Shown here one piece after another: positions 3,641 to 58,652 of a stretch of 64,000 bases of DNA (within the stretch, counting starts at the first letter, position 1; each line of letters begins with the position of its first letter). Source of the DNA: Mobula hypostoma. Its lineage: Eukaryota. The stretch covers positions 40,486,001-40,550,000 of the forward strand of contig NC_086104.1 in NCBI RefSeq assembly GCF_963921235.1, given 5' to 3'. A model generated the notes under the pieces. It was not told the origin of the DNA, ran no database searches, and saw only the letters and a program-made list of their open reading frames with translations. Made by a program: the position numbers and the translations under genes.

Positions 3641-3739
3641 AAGTCCTGACGAAGGGTCTCGGCCTGAAACGTCGACTGCGCCTCTTCCTATAGATGCTGC
3701 TTGGCCTGCTGCGTTCACCAGCAACTTTGATGTATGTTG
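3641..3739 (+). mobile_element. Penelope pseudo-LTR fragment carrying a hammerhead ribozyme
   Basis: 7-bp TSD TATGAAA (3634-3640 / 3740-3746); related to the termini of the Penelope element at 38032-40030 and near-identical to 51291-51414. Confidence 0.85.
3642..3677 (+). ncRNA. Minimal type I hammerhead ribozyme (Penelope-type)
   Basis: AGTC-CTGACGA-AGG gtctcgg CCT-GAAA-CGTC^GACT: intact core, stem I AGTC/GACT, stem II AGG/CCT, palindromic ACGT in place of stem III. Confidence 0.8.
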
Positions 3740-12700: not shown

Positions 12701-14761
12701 GAAACAAAGTTATTATAATAGGTGATTTTAACTTCCCACCTATTGACCGGGACTCCCATACTATAAAAGGACTAGATGCGGTACAGTTTGTCAAATGTGT
12801 TCAGGAGAGTTTACTTAATCAGTACATTGAAGTCCCAACAAGAAAATGTATGACACTTGATCTGCTATTAGGGAATGAGGCAGGGCAGGTGACAGATGTT
12901 TGTGTAGAACACTTTGCATCTAGTGATCATAATGCCATTAATTTCAAAGTAAATATGCAAAAAATAGGGAGAAAAGCCAATTTTGATAGTATCAGAAAGG
13001 ATTTGGCAAGTGTGGATTGGGACAGGCTGTTTTCTGGAAAAGGTGTACTTGAAAAGTGGGAGGCCTTCAAAAGTGAAATTTTGAGCGAACAAGGTTTGTA
13101 TGTGCCTGTCAGAGTAAAAGGTGAAGATAGCAGGTTTAGGGAACCTTGGTTTTCAAGTTTATTGAGGCCCAGGTTAAGAAAGAAAAAGGAGGTATATTGC
13201 AGGTACAGACAAGTAGGAATAAATAAGGTGCTAATGGAGTAAAAAAAATGTAAGAGAAAGAAATGAGGAAGGCTTAAAGAAGGCATGAGGTTGCCCCAGC
13301 AGACAAGGTGAAGGGGAATCCTAATGGATTCTACAGATATGTTAAGACCAAAAGGACTACAAGGATAAAATTGGTCCTCTGGAAGATCAGAATGGTAATC
13401 CACACATGGGAGATCTTCAGTGAAATTTTTGCATCTGTATTTACTCAGGAGAGGGACACAAAGTCTACAGAAGTGAGGTAAAGTGGCATCAATTTCATGG
13501 ACCCTGTACAGATTACACAGGAGGAGGTGTTTGCTGTCCTGAGGCAAAATAGGTGGATAAATCCCCAGGGCCTGACAAGGTGTTCTCTCAGACCCTGTGG
13601 TAGGCAAGTGCAGAAATTGCCTGGGCTCTGGCTGAGATTGTTAAATCATCCTCAGTGACAGGTGAGGTTCCGGAGGATTGGAGGATAGCCAATGTTGTCC
13701 TGTTGTTCATGAAAGGTTCTAAAAATAAACCAGGTAATCATAGGCCAGTGAGCGTGATATCAGTTGTGGGAAAATTATTGTGAGTTATTCAAAGGGACCA
13801 AATATATGAAATGCTGATTAAGGATAGTCAGCATGGCTTCGTGCGTGGTAGGTTGTGTCTAACCAATCTTATAGAGTTTTTCGAGGAAGTTACCAGGAAA
13901 GTTGATGGATGCAAGGTAGTGGATGTTGTCTACATGGACTTTAGAAAGGCAGTGACAAGGTCCCACATAGGAGATTGGTCAATGAGGCTCAGTTGCTCAG
14001 CACTCAAGATGAGGTAGTAAATTGGATTAGACATTGACTTTGTGGGAGAAGCCAGAGAGTGGCAGTAGATGGTTATCTCTCTGAGTAGTGGAATGCTGCA
14101 GAGATCGGTGCTGGATCTGTTGTATTTGTCCTCTATATTGACATCTTGATGATAATGTGGTTAACTAGATCAGCTAATTTGCAGACGACACCAAGACCGG
14201 GGGTGTAGCACACAATAAGGAAGACTACTCATATCATGGCTTGCAGCAGAATCTGGACTAGCTAGAAAAATGGGATTTAAAAAAAAGGGCAGATAGAATT
14301 TAATACAGACAAGTGCGAGGTATAAGAGTAAGTCTTACACAGTGAACGGCAGGACATTGAGGAATGCTGCAGAACAAAGTGATCTAAGAATAGAGGTCCA
14401 GAATTCACTGAAAGTGGAGTCACAAGAAGATTAGGTTGTAAAGAAAGCTTTTGGTAAGTTGGTCTTCATAAATTAAAGTATTGAGTACAGGATGTTATGT
14501 TGAAGTTGTACAAGACGTTGGTGAGGACTAATTTGGAGTATTGAATGCAGGTTTGGTCATCTACCTACAGAAAAGATGTAAATAAGGTTGAAAGGGTACA
14601 GAGAAAGTTTACAAGGATGTTGTCGGGACTGAAGGACCAGAGTTATCAGGAAAGACTGAATCGGTTTGGACTTTATCCTTGGAACGTAGAAGATTGAAGG
14701 GAGAATTGACTGAGGCGTACAAAATATTATGAGGGATATAGGTAGGGTAAATGAAAGCAAG

Positions 14762-15328
14762 GGGTATATGGGGTGTCAGGGAGGGGTAGCACCTCTGGTG
14801 GGGGAACATGTCGCGTCCTTTTTTGGACGGTTAGTCCACCTTTGGTCCCCACCTGGCACTCAGCTCTCACCTGTGGTTCCCAGTAGCTGTTTGCATGCAA
14901 CAGCGGCCACACCCCGGGCAATGGCTTTGACCAGCCGGCTAAACCAGGTGAGGGAAGCCGATGGGTCTCAAACCCTCAGTGAGATAGGGAGTTGTCTATC
15001 CCAGCATGTGAAGATAGACGCCGGCGGATTGAGCAGACAAAACCAATGGAAGGTCCAACGGTCAAGAAGGCGGTCTCTGCAAGCATCGTGGAACGTGTAG
15101 AGCAGGACAAGACACAGAAGACGTCCTGGTCATCCACTGCGCCTAGTCCCATCTCCAGCTGTCTAGACTCTGTCTTGCCACTGGACCCAGATGGGAATTG
15201 GGAAGAGAGAGTGAGGCTGACGCTGCGCAACTCTCCCTCACTTAAATCCAAATCACGCGCTAGTCTCGACACCATCATAATGGTGTCAAGGTCCTCATCG
15301 ACGTCAACGATGGACGAACAACAACAAC
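14762..15328 (+). mobile_element. Young RTE-type non-autonomous retroelement with 5' HDV-like ribozyme
   Basis: 13-bp TSD AAATGAAAGCAAG (14749-14761 / 15329-15341); (CAA)n tail; no coding homology; nested in CR1. Confidence 0.85.
14770..14954 (+). ncRNA. HDV-like (delta) self-cleaving ribozyme candidate
   Basis: P1 GGGGTGT 14770-76 / ACACCCC 14909-15; P2 CTCTCACCTGT 14864-74 / AC(C)AGGTGAGGG 14943-54; P3 GGT 14875-77 / GCC 14906-08; P1.1 CC 14879-80 / GG 14916-17; GGGCAA junction; P4 TGGCT 14922-26 / AGCCG 14933-37; J4/2 GCTAA with candidate catalytic C14939. Confidence 0.78.
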
Positions 15329-16469
15329 AAATGAAAGCAAGCTTTTCCCACTGAGGTTGGGTGGGACTACAAATAAACATCATGGGTTAAGAGTGAAAGG
15401 TGTAAAGTTTAAAGGGAACCTTCTTCACTCAGAGGGCCATGAGTGTGTGGAACGAGATGCCAGTGTAATTGGTGCATGCAAGCTCTATTTCAAAGTTTAA
15501 GAGGAGTTTACATAAGTACGTGGATAGCAGGGGTATGGAGGGCTATGATCCTGGTGCAGGTCGATGGGAGTAGGCAGTTTAATTGGTTTGGCATGGACTA
15601 GATGGGCCAAAGTGCCTGCTTCTGTGCTGTATTATTCTTAAACTCTATGCGGAAGAAGGTCTAGTGGTTGGACAACTAACGTATAACTTTTTGGCCTGAA
15701 TACTAGACAGTACATGTGGCGTAAAAATATAATACTGTGCATCCGCCAGGTAACACCATCCCTACTATAAAGTATGCTATGGGGATGCTTTTCAGCAGCA
15801 GGGACCGGAATTCTGGTCAGGATTGATGAGAGAAAGAATGCTGTCAAGTACAGAGAGATCCTGGATAAAAACCTGTTAAGACTGCCAGACAGCTTAAACT
15901 GGAGAGGAAGTTAGCCTTTACTCAGGACAACAACCCAAAGCACACTGCCAGAGCAACCTTGAAGTGGCTTCAAATGAAGAAAATTGATGGCATTGAGTAG
16001 CCCAGTCAGGGTCCTGTCCTTAACCCAATCGACCATCTCTGGCAAGTGCTCAAAGCTGCTGCCCACTGCCACTCCCCAAGTAATCTGGCACAGCTTGAGC
16101 AATTTTGCAAGGAGAAATGGGCAAATCCTGCTCCATCACATTGTGCAAAGCTAATAGAACCTCATCCAAAAAGACTACTGACTGTAATAGCTGTGAGAGG
16201 TAGTTTAACTAAGTACTGAGCAAAGGGGGAATGAATATATTTGAACTATTGACATTTCAGTTTCTAAATTTTTAATTTTTTATCCCTGTTCTTGGGCTCT
16301 ATTATGACAGAAGGAGTATGTGATTCACAAACAAAAGTTGTCAGTTAAATTGATCAAAAACCCTGGTTGTAATACTCATTTAAGGGAACAAAGGGGTGGG
16401 GACTGAATACATTTACAAGGCACTGTAACAAGTAATAGGTTGCACTCAAGACAGCTATCCCATTGGGCT

Positions 16470-56390: not shown

Positions 56391-56751
56391 AAACCCATAT
56401 GGATTTCAGCAGAGTGAAGTTTATACAAGTTGATCAGCAATGATGAACGGAAGTCAATTGTTTAAATCCATGTGAGCTTTGAGAATTAAATCAGGCTTAA
56501 CAAAAATCCAAAGTAACACTGAACCTTTTTGCAATCATTTTTTAAAAGAAATTACAGAAGTGCTCAGAGCTCTTCATTTACTTTGGATGAAGAAGTTAAT
56601 TCAATTCTGTTCATCTTCCAATTTTTACCTAGAATGAACTCATATCACTTGAAAAAAGTTGTCCAATTTTCTTTTAGTTCTATATTTATCATCATTTAGT
56701 TATCTGCTCATTCCAAATAGGGTTGGGGGCTGGCCTTGCCCATCGGTGCTG

Positions 56752-58434
56752 CCATCCAGTGTTTGCACAGTGGAAGATAAGCTGTATAGTGCTCATCTGC
56801 CTTCCGGTGTCTGCACTGTGGACGATAAGCTGCACAGTGCTCATCTGCCTTCCAGTGTTCGCACAGTCGAAGAAGATAAGCTGTATAGTACTCATCTGCC
56901 TTCCGGTGTCCGCACAGTGGACGATAAGCTGCATTGTGTTCATCTGCCTTCCGGTGATCACACAGTGGACAATAAGCTGTATAGTGTTCATCTGCCTTCC
57001 GGTGTCCGCACAGTGGAAGATAAGCTGTACACTATTCATCCGCCTTCCGGTGTCCGCACTGTGGACGATAAGCTGTATAGTGCTCATCTGCCTTCCAGTG
57101 TTCGCACTGTGGACGATAAGGTGTATAGTATTCATCCGCCTTCCGGTGTTCGCACAGTGGACGATAAGTTGTATAGTATTCATCTGCCTTCTGGTGTTCG
57201 CACTATGGACGGTAAGTTGTATAGTATTCATCTGCCTTCCAGTGTTCGCACAGTGGAAGATAAGCTGTATAGTATTCATCCGCCTTCCGGTGTCCGCACT
57301 GTGGAAGATAAGCTGTATAGTATTCATCCGCCTTCCGGTGTTCGCACAGTGGAAGATAAGCTGTATAGTATTCATCTGCCTTCCGGTGTTCGCACAGTGG
57401 ACGATAAGCTGTATAGTATTCATCTGCCTTCCGGTGTTCGCACCGTGGACGATAAGCTGTATAGTGTTCATCTGCCTTCCTGTATCCGCACTGTGGACGA
57501 TAAGCTGTATAGTGTTCATCTGCCTTCCTGTATCCGCACTGTGGACGATTAGCTGTATAGTGTTCATCTGCCTTCCGGTGTCCGCACTGTGGACGATAAG
57601 CTGTATAGTGTTCATCTGCCTTCCGGTGTTCGCACCGTGGACGATAAGCTGTATAGTGTTCATCTGCCTTCCGGTGTCCGCACTGTGGACGATAAGCTGT
57701 ATAGTGTTCATCTGCCTTCTGGTGTTCGCACTGTGGACGATAAGCTGTACAGTGTTCATCTGCCTTCCGGTGTCCGCACTGTGGACGATAAGCTGTATAG
57801 TGTTCATCTGCCTTCTGGTGTTCGCACAGTGGACGATAAGCTGCATAGCGTTCATCTGCCTTCCGGTGTTCGTAATGTGGACGATAAGCTGTATAGTGTT
57901 CATCTGCCTTCCGGTGTTCGCACCGTGGACGATAAGCTGTATAGTATTCATCTGCCTTCCGGTGTTCGCACTGTGGACGATAAGCTGTATGGTGTTCACC
58001 TGCCTTCTGGTGTTCGCACAGTGGACGATAAGCTGCATAGTGTTCATCTGCCTTCTGGTGTTCGCACAGTGGACGATAAGCTGCATAGTATTCATCTGCC
58101 TTCCGGTGTCCGCACTGTGGACGATAAGCTGCATAGTGTTCATCTGCCTTCCGGTGTTCGTAATGTGGACGATAAACTGCATTATGTTCATCTGCCTTCC
58201 GGTGTTCGTAATGTGGACGATAAGCTGTATAGTGTTCATCTGCCTTCCGGTGTCCGCACTGTGGACGATAAGCTGTATAGTGTTCATCTGCCTTCCGGTG
58301 TTCGTAATGTGGACGATAAGCTGTACAGTGTTCATCTGCCTTCCGGTGTCCGCACTGTGGACGATAAACTGTATAGTGTTCATCTGCCTTCTGGTGTTCG
58401 TAATGTGGACGATAAACTGCATTATGTTCATCTG
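56752..58434 (+). repeat. 48-bp minisatellite, 35 units (consensus CCTTCCGGTGTYCGCACWGTGGACGATAAGCTGTATAGTRTTCATCTG)
   Basis: 1683 bp = 35 x 48 + one 3-bp insertion; embedded in the start of a Rex/L2-type APE domain. Confidence 0.95.
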
Positions 58435-58652
58435 CCGCTGCACCTGCACGAGATGAATACTGCTACAGGCAGGCTTGTTCTTGCAGAAACATGGCTCCAG
58501 GACAACATCCATGCACACCATTAATAAAGAGGCCATGATACTCAAGGATTTGGCCTATGTTAATATTTTTTAAATATTATTTTTCAAAGTTCAAGGTCAA
58601 TTTATTATCGAAGTATGTATACTACAGACAACCATGAGATGTGACTCCTTAT

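What the first reader, a model, noticed from the sequence alone, without database searches (positions are those of the whole stretch)
14770..14954. HDV-like ribozyme at the 5' end of a young non-autonomous RTE-type retroelement
Seen: every element of the delta double pseudoknot can be placed in the correct order. These are a perfect 7-bp P1 starting with G (14770-76/14909-15), an 11-bp P2 with one bulged C, a 3-bp P3 (one U-G pair), L3 starting UCC with G at the G25 position (14883), P1.1 CC/GG, the GGGCAA junction as in genomic HDV, a 5-bp P4, and J4/2 GCUAA as in antigenomic HDV (candidate catalytic C14939). The predicted cut, 5' of G14770, is only 8 nt from the TSD-defined start of the element. 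Established: R2, L1Tc and some RTE elements use 5' HDV-like ribozymes to release themselves from host read-through transcripts. Inference: this is a non-coding, ribozyme-processed element with no tRNA-type head, which borrows RTE enzymes through its (CAA)n tail. I do not recall one described in cartilaginous fish, but cannot check.
Basis: partly seen in the sequence, partly recalled or inferred. Interest (0 to 1): 0.9.

Follow-up and report, generated by a model that had tools for sequence, protein, structure and literature searches.

The report
Delta-type ribozyme heading a deleted LINE

Summary
A descriptor loose enough to accept it hits nothing else in the window and 0 of 24 Mb of composition-matched random sequence.

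The element (14761-15330, 12-13-bp TSD) is an internally deleted LINE. About 520 nt match the 5' UTR of a 4.2-kb endonuclease/RT LINE, followed by that LINE's conserved 3' stem-loop and a (CAA)n tail.

Ten related heads keep the double pseudoknot: 95.8% of cells paired, and compensatory changes in P1, P2 and the L3 hairpin. The L3 U/CC/G, the P1.1 GG and candidate catalytic C14939 are invariant.

Correction: seven full-length loci and at least 98 junction contigs begin at G14761, not G14770. The terminal heptamer (site A, 14761-67) pairs with P1' in all of them.

No Rfam delta family hits the window. L3 carries an unusual 20-nt hairpin. Cleavage is untested.

The scan had already noted this family on other DNA of this genome (s1-141860 and six others). 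Verdict: new variant of a known kind.

The parts
14749..14760 (+). Left target-site duplication. G14761 could be either the last TSD base or the element's first base.
   Evidence: Direct reading. Host-repeat copies without the insertion join 14759 to 15343 (joints).
14761..15330 (+). Whole non-autonomous element: LINE 5' UTR part, then 3' stem-loop, then (CAA)n.
   Evidence: Alignment A1 to L001. 3' comparison. Very high word depth, 2-9e5. Single copy in the window.
14761..14767 (+). Site A, the proposed true P1 5' strand (GGGGUAU). The predicted scissile bond is 5' of G14761.
   Evidence: 98 junction contigs start aligning at 14761 behind unrelated flanks. Seven full-length loci start here. 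It pairs with P1' in 97.6% of cells, with one compensatory change. In this family A14766 faces C14910.
14770..14776 (+). It is a tandem duplicate of site A.
   Evidence: 7/7 with P1' in this copy but only 71.4% of cells paired across relatives. It pairs with 14852-61 in the MFE fold.
14768..14863 (+). J1/2, a structured peripheral domain. Its interior differs between subfamilies.
   Evidence: RNAalifold consensus with compensatory pairs. The closing stem CAGG/CCUG covaries. Depth is lowest at 14807-33, and there is an alternative head upstream of 14837.
14864..14874 (+). P2 5' strand.
   Evidence: Pairs with 14943-54. U14872-A14946 becomes A-U in L004, L013, L014 and L019. A14869-U14949 becomes G-C in L002.
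14875..14877 (+). P3 5' strand. It reads GGU here and GGC in the family majority.
   Evidence: T14877>C in 91-99% of laid depth. 100% of cells paired.
14878..14905 (+). L3. The core UCCNNG is followed by an inserted hairpin (stems 14886-91 and 14899-904).
   Evidence: U14878, C14879, C14880 and G14883 are invariant in 10/10 sequences, while 14881-82 vary. The outer hairpin pair runs G-C, G.U, A-U across relatives.
14906..14908 (+). P3 3' strand.
14909..14915 (+). P1' (ACACCCC).
   Evidence: It reads ACACCAC in L001, matched by GUGGUGU at site A. It reads ACACCCU in L002 and L019, giving G.U at the cleavage pair.
14916..14917 (+). The GG of P1.1, pairing with C14879-80.
   Evidence: Invariant in 10/10.
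14922..14937 (+). P4 hairpin.
   Evidence: 97.7% of cells paired, with one-sided changes. A sister subfamily in the same genomes has the second pair flipped from G-C to C-G (loose ends at 14914-17). T14922>C in the majority makes a C-G pair.
14938..14942 (+). J4/2 (GCUAA), holding candidate catalytic C14939.
   Evidence: C is invariant in 10/10. The next base varies: U, U, A.
14943..14954 (+). P2 3' strand, with C14944 bulged.
14955..15283 (+). Remainder of the LINE 5' UTR-derived body. Non-coding.
   Evidence: About 83% identity to L001 5' UTR. Its open frames run mechanically through the flanks or the ribozyme. I did not search them against any protein family library.
15285..15319 (+). LINE-type 3' stem-loop ending in GGACGAAC.
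   Evidence: Conserved at the 3' end of 8 LINE loci. One pair is seen as U-A, A-U and G-C.
15317..15330 (+). (CAA)n/(AAC)n tail.
   Evidence: Related LINEs end in (CAT)n, (ATT)n or (ATGT)n.
15329..15341 (+). Right target-site duplication. It overlaps the A-rich end of the tail.

Best explanation
Window 14761-14954 is an HDV-like (delta-fold) self-cleaving ribozyme. It forms the 5' end of an internally deleted LINE.

Shown:
- The element consists of the parent LINE's 5' UTR, its 3' recognition stem-loop and a microsatellite tail.
- The double pseudoknot and the delta-type invariant bases are conserved, with compensatory changes, across about 20-25% sequence divergence.
- Genomic copies of both the LINE and the deletion derivative begin exactly at the first G of the terminal heptamer.

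Inferred mechanism:
1. The element has no recognisable promoter and is transcribed as part of longer host or read-through RNA.
2. The structured J1/2 hairpin forms first and ties up the duplicate heptamer (site B, 14770-76).
3. The terminal heptamer (site A, 14761-67) pairs with P1' (14909-15).
4. C14939 in J4/2 catalyses scission 5' of G14761. This releases an RNA whose first base is the element's first base.
5. The LINE's endonuclease/RT recognises the 3' stem-loop and tail, and copies the RNA into a new site by target-primed reverse transcription. Each full-length copy therefore regenerates the whole ribozyme.

Cleavage itself has not been observed.
For: - Pairs verified.
- The motif is unique in the window and absent from 24 Mb of matched random sequence.
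- The parent LINE L001 has a homologous 5' UTR, a 1070-aa ORF with Exo_endo_phos and RVT_1 domains, and a homologous 3' end.
- The 3' stem-loop covaries.
- In 10 related heads, 95.8% of cells pair against 29-49% for slid controls. Four pairs have changes on both sides, against 0-1 in slid controls. Only 2 of 500 shuffles reach the observed covariation score.
- L3 U/CC/G, P1.1 GG and the J4/2 C are invariant. L3 positions 4-5 and the base after C vary, as in HDV.
- RNAalifold independently recovers P2, P3, the L3 hairpin, P4 and a structured J1/2.
- The family majority repairs the two wobble pairs of this copy: 14877 T>C and 14922 T>C.
- A sister subfamily flips a P4 pair from G-C to C-G.
- 5' ends: 98 junction contigs start at 14761, and no other start class exceeds 41. 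Seven loci with unrelated flanks start with G(G/U)GGUGU.
- P1 with site A pairs in 97.6% of cells, including a G-C to U-A change in L001. With site B it pairs in 71.4%.
- A LINE whose protein is 79% identical (L003) carries a canonical short-L3 delta core. It gives a sub-threshold Rfam drz-agam-1 match of 26.7 bits, E 0.13.
- Large J1/2 and mismatches at the top of P1 are documented in active R2 ribozymes (PMC3774820).
Against: - No cleavage data exist.
- No Rfam delta family matches the window or L013, even at E<=10.
- L3 is 26-28 nt with an inserted hairpin. I know of no active HDV-like ribozyme built this way, so it may not be catalytically competent.
- In this family site A has an A.C mismatch at pair 6, while site B is perfect.
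- The cleavage-site pair is G-C in most copies rather than the usual G.U.
- The unconstrained MFE fold is no more stable than shuffles, z = -0.76.
- The comparative set is small: 9 distinct sequences, some of them closely related. The structure was derived from one member.
- A 5' end that coincides with P1 would also be seen if transcription simply started there.
Confidence: 0.68

Rival explanations
1. P1 is site B (14770-76) and the ribozyme cuts 5' of G14770. The eight or nine bases upstream are a leader that cleavage removes.
For: Site B pairs 7/7 with P1' in this copy and in the family majority, whereas site A has one A.C mismatch. In L002, L013 and L014 both heptamers pair equally well. 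A minority class of copies starting at 14770 cannot be excluded: up to 41 contigs against 98.
Against: RNA cut at G14770 would give copies lacking 14761-69. Yet the family and all seven full-length relatives keep those bases and start at 14761. Site B does not pair with P1' in L001 and is imperfect in L004 and L017. The P1' change in L001 is compensated at site A only. Site B is sequestered in a 10-bp helix with 14852-61 that is transcribed before P1'.
Confidence: 0.1
2. A conserved but non-catalytic 5' UTR fold. It would be a former ribozyme, or a protein-binding, stabilising or translation element of the LINE. The deletion derivative keeps it because the LINE machinery needs it. The 5' end would be set by transcription initiation at G14761.
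For: The long hairpin inside L3 and the G-C cleavage pair depart from active delta ribozymes. No Rfam model recognises the fold. Conservation and covariation show a structure, not chemistry. R2 protein is known to bind its 5' RNA (general knowledge). A terminal helix would also put P1 at the first base.
Against: The bases that never change are the ones delta catalysis needs: the C in J4/2, GG/CC of P1.1, and U and G of L3. Neighbouring unpaired bases vary. The peripheral parts (J1/2 interior, P4) are the ones that diverge between subfamilies. A close LINE relative has a canonical delta core. No promoter-like head was recognised.
Confidence: 0.18
3. Chance resemblance of a GC-rich repeat to the delta fold.
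For: The fold was found by eye with free choice of long spacers. The MFE z-score is unremarkable. There is no Rfam hit.
Against: 0 hits in 24 Mb of matched random sequence. Pairing is kept with compensatory changes in relatives about 20% diverged. The motif sits at the exact 5' terminus of a retroelement family whose relatives have canonical delta cores.
Confidence: 0.03

Closest known systems
HDV-like ribozymes at the 5' termini of RTE, Baggins, R2 and other non-LTR retrotransposons (Ruminski et al. 2011, J Biol Chem 286:41286, not readable here; summarised in PMC6765202 and PMC8256844)
   Same: Delta double pseudoknot at the 5' end of a promoter-less LINE. The cleavage site equals the element's first base. 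Upstream flanks are unrelated and downstream sequence is conserved. The whole ribozyme is regenerated in each copy.
   Different: L3 carries a ~20-nt hairpin insertion. J1/2 is a ~95-nt structured domain. The P1 5' strand is duplicated in tandem. No Rfam delta family recognises it. The host range here is aquatic chordates, with a very high copy number.
R2 ribozymes and the model for shifting cleavage sites (Eickbush, Burke & Eickbush 2013, PMC3774820)
   Same: P1 to P1' distances of 23 to more than 700 nt. Mismatches at the top of P1 are tolerated. P4 is variable. A duplicated P1 sequence at the 5' junction is proposed to move the cleavage site and extend the 5' end, which resembles the site A/site B arrangement seen here.
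   Different: R2 is site-specific, and its P1 often uses 28S rRNA sequence. This element is dispersed, and both heptamers are its own.
SIDEs (R2 and R2/R1 internal-deletion derivatives, PMC3414825) and NARTc/L1Tc with Pr77/L1TcRz (PMC3185411, PMC3383444)
   Same: Non-autonomous elements formed by internal deletion of a LINE. They keep the 5' delta-type ribozyme and the 3' end recognised by the LINE's RT.
   Different: Those are insect rDNA-specific or trypanosomatid elements of low to moderate copy number. This one is dispersed in a vertebrate genome at SINE-like abundance. In L1Tc the same 77 nt also act as a promoter, which was not examined here.
drz-agam-1 (Rfam RF01787)
   Same: The head of the related LINE L003 aligns to its P2-P3-L3-P1'-J4/2 core (26.7 bits, E 0.13).
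   Different: The match is below the gathering score of 37. The window's own ribozyme does not match at all.
Twister-variant ribozymes of Perere-3, an RTE-clade LINE of Schistosoma (PMC8501958)
   Same: A 5' ribozyme releases an RTE-type element, and TSDs abut the cleavage site.
   Different: The ribozyme class is different, and there the TSD itself contributes to P1.

Membership tests
HDV-like (delta-fold) self-cleaving ribozyme | Nested double pseudoknot with P1, P2, P3, P1.1 and P4 in the canonical order | tested here: met
   All helices can be placed. 95.8% of cells pair in 10 relatives, against 29-49% for slid controls.
HDV-like (delta-fold) self-cleaving ribozyme | Pairing kept through compensatory changes | tested here: met
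   Four pairs have changes on both sides, in P1, P2 (two) and the L3 hairpin. Only 2 of 500 shuffles reach the observed score. A P4 flip is seen in a sister subfamily. The sample is small.
HDV-like (delta-fold) self-cleaving ribozyme | Catalytic C in J4/2 followed by purines | tested here: met
   C14939 is invariant in 10/10. J4/2 reads GCUAA, GCUGA or GCAAA. This is a sequence-level test only.
HDV-like (delta-fold) self-cleaving ribozyme | L3 begins U-C-C with G at the sixth position, and the CC pairs with the GG after P1' | tested here: met
   U14878, C14879-80, G14883 and G14916-17 are invariant. Positions 4-5 vary.
HDV-like (delta-fold) self-cleaving ribozyme | Short L3 of about 7-8 nt | tested here: not met
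   L3 is 26-28 nt in all ten sequences, with a conserved inserted hairpin. The related L003 has a 7-nt L3.
HDV-like (delta-fold) self-cleaving ribozyme | G at +1, usually in a G.U wobble | tested here: inconclusive
   G is at +1 in all. The pair is G-C in most and G.U in L002 and L019.
HDV-like (delta-fold) self-cleaving ribozyme | Match to a curated covariance model | tested here: not met
   No delta family at E<=10 in the window or in L013.
HDV-like (delta-fold) self-cleaving ribozyme | Mg2+-dependent self-scission 5' of P1 | not testable with these tools
   Needs in vitro transcription or mapping of 5'-OH ends.
Ribozyme-terminated non-LTR retrotransposon | The 5' ends of genomic copies coincide with the predicted cleavage site | tested here: met
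Met for site A: 98 junction contigs at 14761 and seven loci.
Non-autonomous deletion derivative of a LINE (SIDE/NARTc type) | 5' and 3' ends homologous to an autonomous LINE, with the coding region missing | tested here: met
   About 83% identity to the L001 5' UTR. Shared 3' stem-loop. The open frames in the element were not tested as protein.
RTE clade of LINEs | RT/EN phylogenetic placement within RTE | not tested
   Only the architecture was checked: a single ~1070-aa ORF with an APE-type endonuclease and RVT_1, a ~40-nt 3' UTR and a microsatellite tail. No reference RTs were available.
Classical SINE (Pol III head) | tRNA-, 5S- or 7SL-derived head with internal promoter boxes | tested here: not met
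   No such Rfam match at E<=10. The head is LINE 5' UTR.

The most novel reading that the evidence does not exclude
This would be an active delta-fold ribozyme with an architecture not described before: a hairpin inserted in L3, a ~95-nt structured J1/2, and a tandemly duplicated P1 strand offering two cleavage registers. It would head an RTE-like LINE lineage spread through aquatic chordates. Through its deletion derivative it would be present at SINE-like abundance in shark-type genomes, making it one of the most numerous ribozyme families in any vertebrate, and current covariance models would miss it.
Probability: 0.45. Interest if true: 0.75.

Novelty: new variant of a known kind. Interest (0 to 1): 0.6.

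Why it matters
Delta-type ribozymes at LINE 5' ends have been known since 2010-2011, so the principle is not new. If this one cleaves, three things follow.

1. The delta active site tolerates a helix inserted in L3. That widens the descriptors used to search genomes, since Rfam and standard descriptors miss this family.
2. A promoter-less, ribozyme-processed deletion derivative can reach SINE-like copy numbers in a vertebrate without a Pol III head.
3. The tandem P1 strands give a natural system for testing how cleavage-site choice sets, and over time shifts, the 5' end of a retroelement.

The corrected cleavage site also matters in practice. Assays designed around G14770 alone would misread the result.

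Tried and rejected
- **Rfam.** The gathering scan of the whole window and the E<=10 scans of 14600-15450 and of the L013 head found no delta, tRNA, 5S, 7SL or snRNA family.
- **Other copies in the window.** blastn found none.
- **An alternative P1' for the 8-nt 'leader'.** No partner in a delta-compatible position. The leader was later explained as site A pairing with the same P1'.
- **The leader copied from elsewhere in the element.** GGGTATAT occurs only once.
- **Pol III head.** The A/B-box-like strings are not conserved in the sister head and have no Rfam support. The T6 run at 14820-25 is specific to this copy, since the family has C and A at 14823-24.
- **Coding capacity.** The open frames cross the flanks or the ribozyme and were not tested as protein.
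- **Thermodynamics.** The MFE z-score is -0.76. The P1-forced fold plus P2 is about as stable as the MFE, so this is not decisive.
- **RNA runs.** They hold the family, but contigs carry no ends or direction, so they give no evidence on cleavage.
- **LINE loci L005-L012** (same protein family, marine metagenomes). No detectable delta-type head by blastn, by descriptor or by Rfam. Either their contigs lack the true 5' end or they use another head.
- **Literature.** No paper in the held library links HDV-like ribozymes with cartilaginous fish. Ruminski 2011 and Webb 2009/2011 are not held.
- **The search of earlier findings by sequence and by words.** Blank.

Full report
**1. The observation**

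I read 14500-16000 and checked each pair by script.

| Helix | Coordinates | Result |
|---|---|---|
| P1 | 14770-76 / 14909-15 | 7/7 Watson-Crick |
| P2 | 14864-74 / 14943-54 | 11 bp, C14944 bulged, one U.G |
| P3 | 14875-77 / 14906-08 | 3 bp |
| P1.1 | CC 14879-80 / GG 14916-17 | 2 bp |
| P4 | 14922-26 / 14933-37 | 5 bp |
| J4/2 | 14938-42 | GCUAA, with C14939 |

- The TSD AAATGAAAGCAAG lies at 14749-61 and 15329-41, and the tail is (CAA)n.
- Two features depart from textbook delta ribozymes. L3 is 28 nt with its own 6-bp hairpin, and J1/2 is 87 nt.
- Rfam finds nothing in the window at gathering thresholds, and nothing delta-like at E<=10 around the element.
- I wrote a descriptor loose enough to accept the candidate. 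It hits only this site on both strands of the window, and nothing in 12 Mb of random sequence with the window's dinucleotide make-up or 12 Mb with the element's. The descriptor was written after the fact, but the candidate is far above its thresholds, so chance is a poor explanation.

**2. What the element is**

- Only one copy lies in the window. Laying contigs of public runs shows a very abundant family in at least five coded organisms, with word depth of 2-9x10^5 and thousands of contigs.
- A scan of metagenome contigs with a 21-base core pattern returned one locus, L001. L001 is a complete 4.2-kb LINE.
  - Its first ~845 nt align with window 14761 to about 15290 at ~83% identity.
  - It has one ORF of 1070 aa with an APE-type endonuclease and a reverse transcriptase.
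  - Its 3' end matches the last ~45 nt of the window element.
- Eight LINE loci of this protein family share that 3' stem-loop, which ends in GGACGAAC and is followed by different microsatellites. One pair of the stem is seen as U-A, A-U and G-C.
- The window element is therefore an internal-deletion derivative: LINE 5' UTR, then the 3' recognition hairpin, then the tail. It is not a SINE with a borrowed tail only.
- The LINE's protein family has more than 1,700 relatives at E<=1e-20 (the best 120 are 63-82% identical to L001's), mostly on ~4-kb contigs of marine and freshwater metagenome assemblies. Where taxa are recorded they are chordates.

**3. Is the fold conserved?**

- I recovered further heads by searching for spurious ORFs that gene callers had placed over the 5' UTR.
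- Ten sequences, nine of them distinct, were aligned from the element's first base (A5).
- For the delta structure with pseudoknots, 95.8% of cells pair, against 29-49% when the 3' partners are slid by 1-3 columns.
- Four pairs change on both sides, against 0-1 in the slid controls. Only 2 of 500 shuffles reach the observed covariation score. The changes are:
  - P1 pair 2: G-C to U-A in L001.
  - P2: A-U to G-C in L002.
  - P2: U-A to A-U in L004, L013, L014 and L019.
  - L3 hairpin outer pair: G-C to A-U in L004, with G.U in L002.
- P3 and P4 change on one side only, through wobbles.
- RNAalifold knows nothing of the delta model, yet it recovers P2, P3, the L3 hairpin, P4 and a structured J1/2.
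- Within the host genomes, the family majority has C at 14877 and at 14922, which turns this copy's two U.G pairs into C-G. A sister subfamily has a different P4 in which the second pair is flipped from G-C to C-G.
- The bases that never change in the ten sequences are U14878, C14879, C14880 and G14883 of L3, G14916-17, C14939 and A14942. L3 positions 4-5 and the base after C14939 vary. This is the pattern expected of a delta active site. The review PMC8256844 notes that only six nucleotides are invariant in the class.
- The parts that diverge between subfamilies are the interior of J1/2 and P4. These are the peripheral elements known to be variable in R2 ribozymes (PMC3774820).

**4. Where it cuts**

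The copies say otherwise.

- In the best-covered run, 98 contigs begin to align at 14761 behind unrelated, AT-rich flanks. No other start class has more than 41.
- Seven full-length loci (the window, L001, L002, L004, L013, L014, L017) all begin with G(G/U)GGUGU directly after unrelated flanks.
- This terminal heptamer (site A, 14761-67) is followed two bases later by a second copy (site B, 14770-76). In L013 and L014 the nine bases GGGGUGUCA are repeated perfectly.
- Site A pairs with P1' in 97.6% of cells. In L001, P1' reads ACACCAC and site A reads GUGGUGU, while site B does not pair.
- With site B as P1, only 71.4% of cells pair.
- In the window and its family, site A has A14766 opposite C14910 and site B is perfect.
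- Mismatches near the top of P1 occur in about a quarter of R2 ribozymes.
- Site B is also the 5' half of a 10-bp helix with 14852-61. That helix closes the J1/2 hairpin and is transcribed before P1'.

My reading is that P1 is site A and the scissile bond is 5' of G14761, the first base of the element. Occasional use of site B cannot be excluded.

**5. How it most likely works**

- Shown: the anatomy, the conservation and the position of the 5' ends.
- Inferred:
  1. The promoter-less element is transcribed inside longer RNAs.
  2. The ribozyme releases an RNA that begins at G14761.
  3. The LINE's protein binds the 3' hairpin and tail and copies the RNA by target-primed reverse transcription.
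  4. Because delta ribozymes lie wholly downstream of their cleavage site, each full-length copy is again self-processing.
- Not shown: cleavage itself, and whether the L3 insertion is compatible with catalysis.
- Support from a relative: L003, whose protein is 79% identical to L001's, has a canonical core with a 7-nt L3, no P4 and G.U at the cleavage pair. It gives a sub-threshold match to Rfam drz-agam-1. Delta-type heads therefore seem to be a property of this LINE group.

**6. Comparison with what is known**

- HDV-like ribozymes at the 5' ends of RTE, Baggins, R2 and L1Tc elements are established. So are deletion derivatives that keep them, namely SIDEs and NARTc (PMC6765202, PMC3414825, PMC3185411).
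- In function and architecture this is a member of that kind.
- It fails two membership tests for the ribozyme class as currently modelled: a short L3, and a covariance-model match.
- It adds a duplicated P1 strand, which recalls the model of Eickbush et al. for shifting cleavage sites.
- I found no report of such elements in cartilaginous fish in the held library. I could not verify the host's identity, because organism names are coded.
- Other first-stage notes on other pieces of this genome describe the same family. They were leads, not evidence.

**7. Verdict**

The ribozyme-headed, LINE-dependent element holds up. The cleavage site and the P1 assignment are corrected by 9 nt. 'RTE' is not tested.
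- It is a new variant of a known kind.
- Confidence that it is a functional self-cleaving ribozyme cutting at G14761 is about 0.68.

Noticed in passing
window 14500-14760 and 15342-15650: The element is inserted in another high-copy repeat. Contigs of that repeat without the insertion join 14759 to 15343, which independently confirms the insertion boundaries.
   Followed up: partly
window 14820-14825: This copy has a T6 run. The family majority has C and A at 14823-24. The run would act as a Pol III terminator and is specific to this copy.
   Followed up: partly
window 3641-3739: Another first-stage note (s1-144476) calls this an intact minimal hammerhead. The Rfam gathering scan of the whole window reported no family at all, hammerheads included.
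   Followed up: no
window 56659-58545: Overlapping long open frames on both strands (297, 311, 577 and 617 aa). Not examined.
   Followed up: no
L003:69-214: A LINE whose protein is 79% identical to L001's has a different, canonical delta-type core. L3 is 7 nt (UCCACGU), there is no P4, P1 is GGGGGGU/ACCCCCU, and J1/2 is about 100 nt. It gives a sub-threshold Rfam drz-agam-1 match (26.7 bits, E 0.13). This agrees with note s1-141875 on a P4-less ribozyme heading an RTE LINE elsewhere in this genome.
   Followed up: partly
L005-L010: The identical 1070-aa LINE protein (P0010) is assembled in at least eight contigs from different marine metagenome samples, including Tara Oceans. Its 3' tails differ between contigs: (ATGT)n in one and (ATT)n in another. 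No delta-type head was detected upstream of its ORF.
   Followed up: partly
L004:1-482: The sequence directly upstream of this LINE's first base is a 96% identical inverted copy of its own bases 1186-1667. This is either a 5' inversion of the twin-priming kind or an assembly artefact.
   Followed up: partly
window 14837 and 14914-14917 (family level): Hundreds of contigs in four species switch at these points to alternative sequence. Upstream of 14837 there is a different J1/2 interior, and after P1' a different P4. The catalytic core is therefore shared by several subfamilies with swapped peripheral parts.
   Followed up: partly
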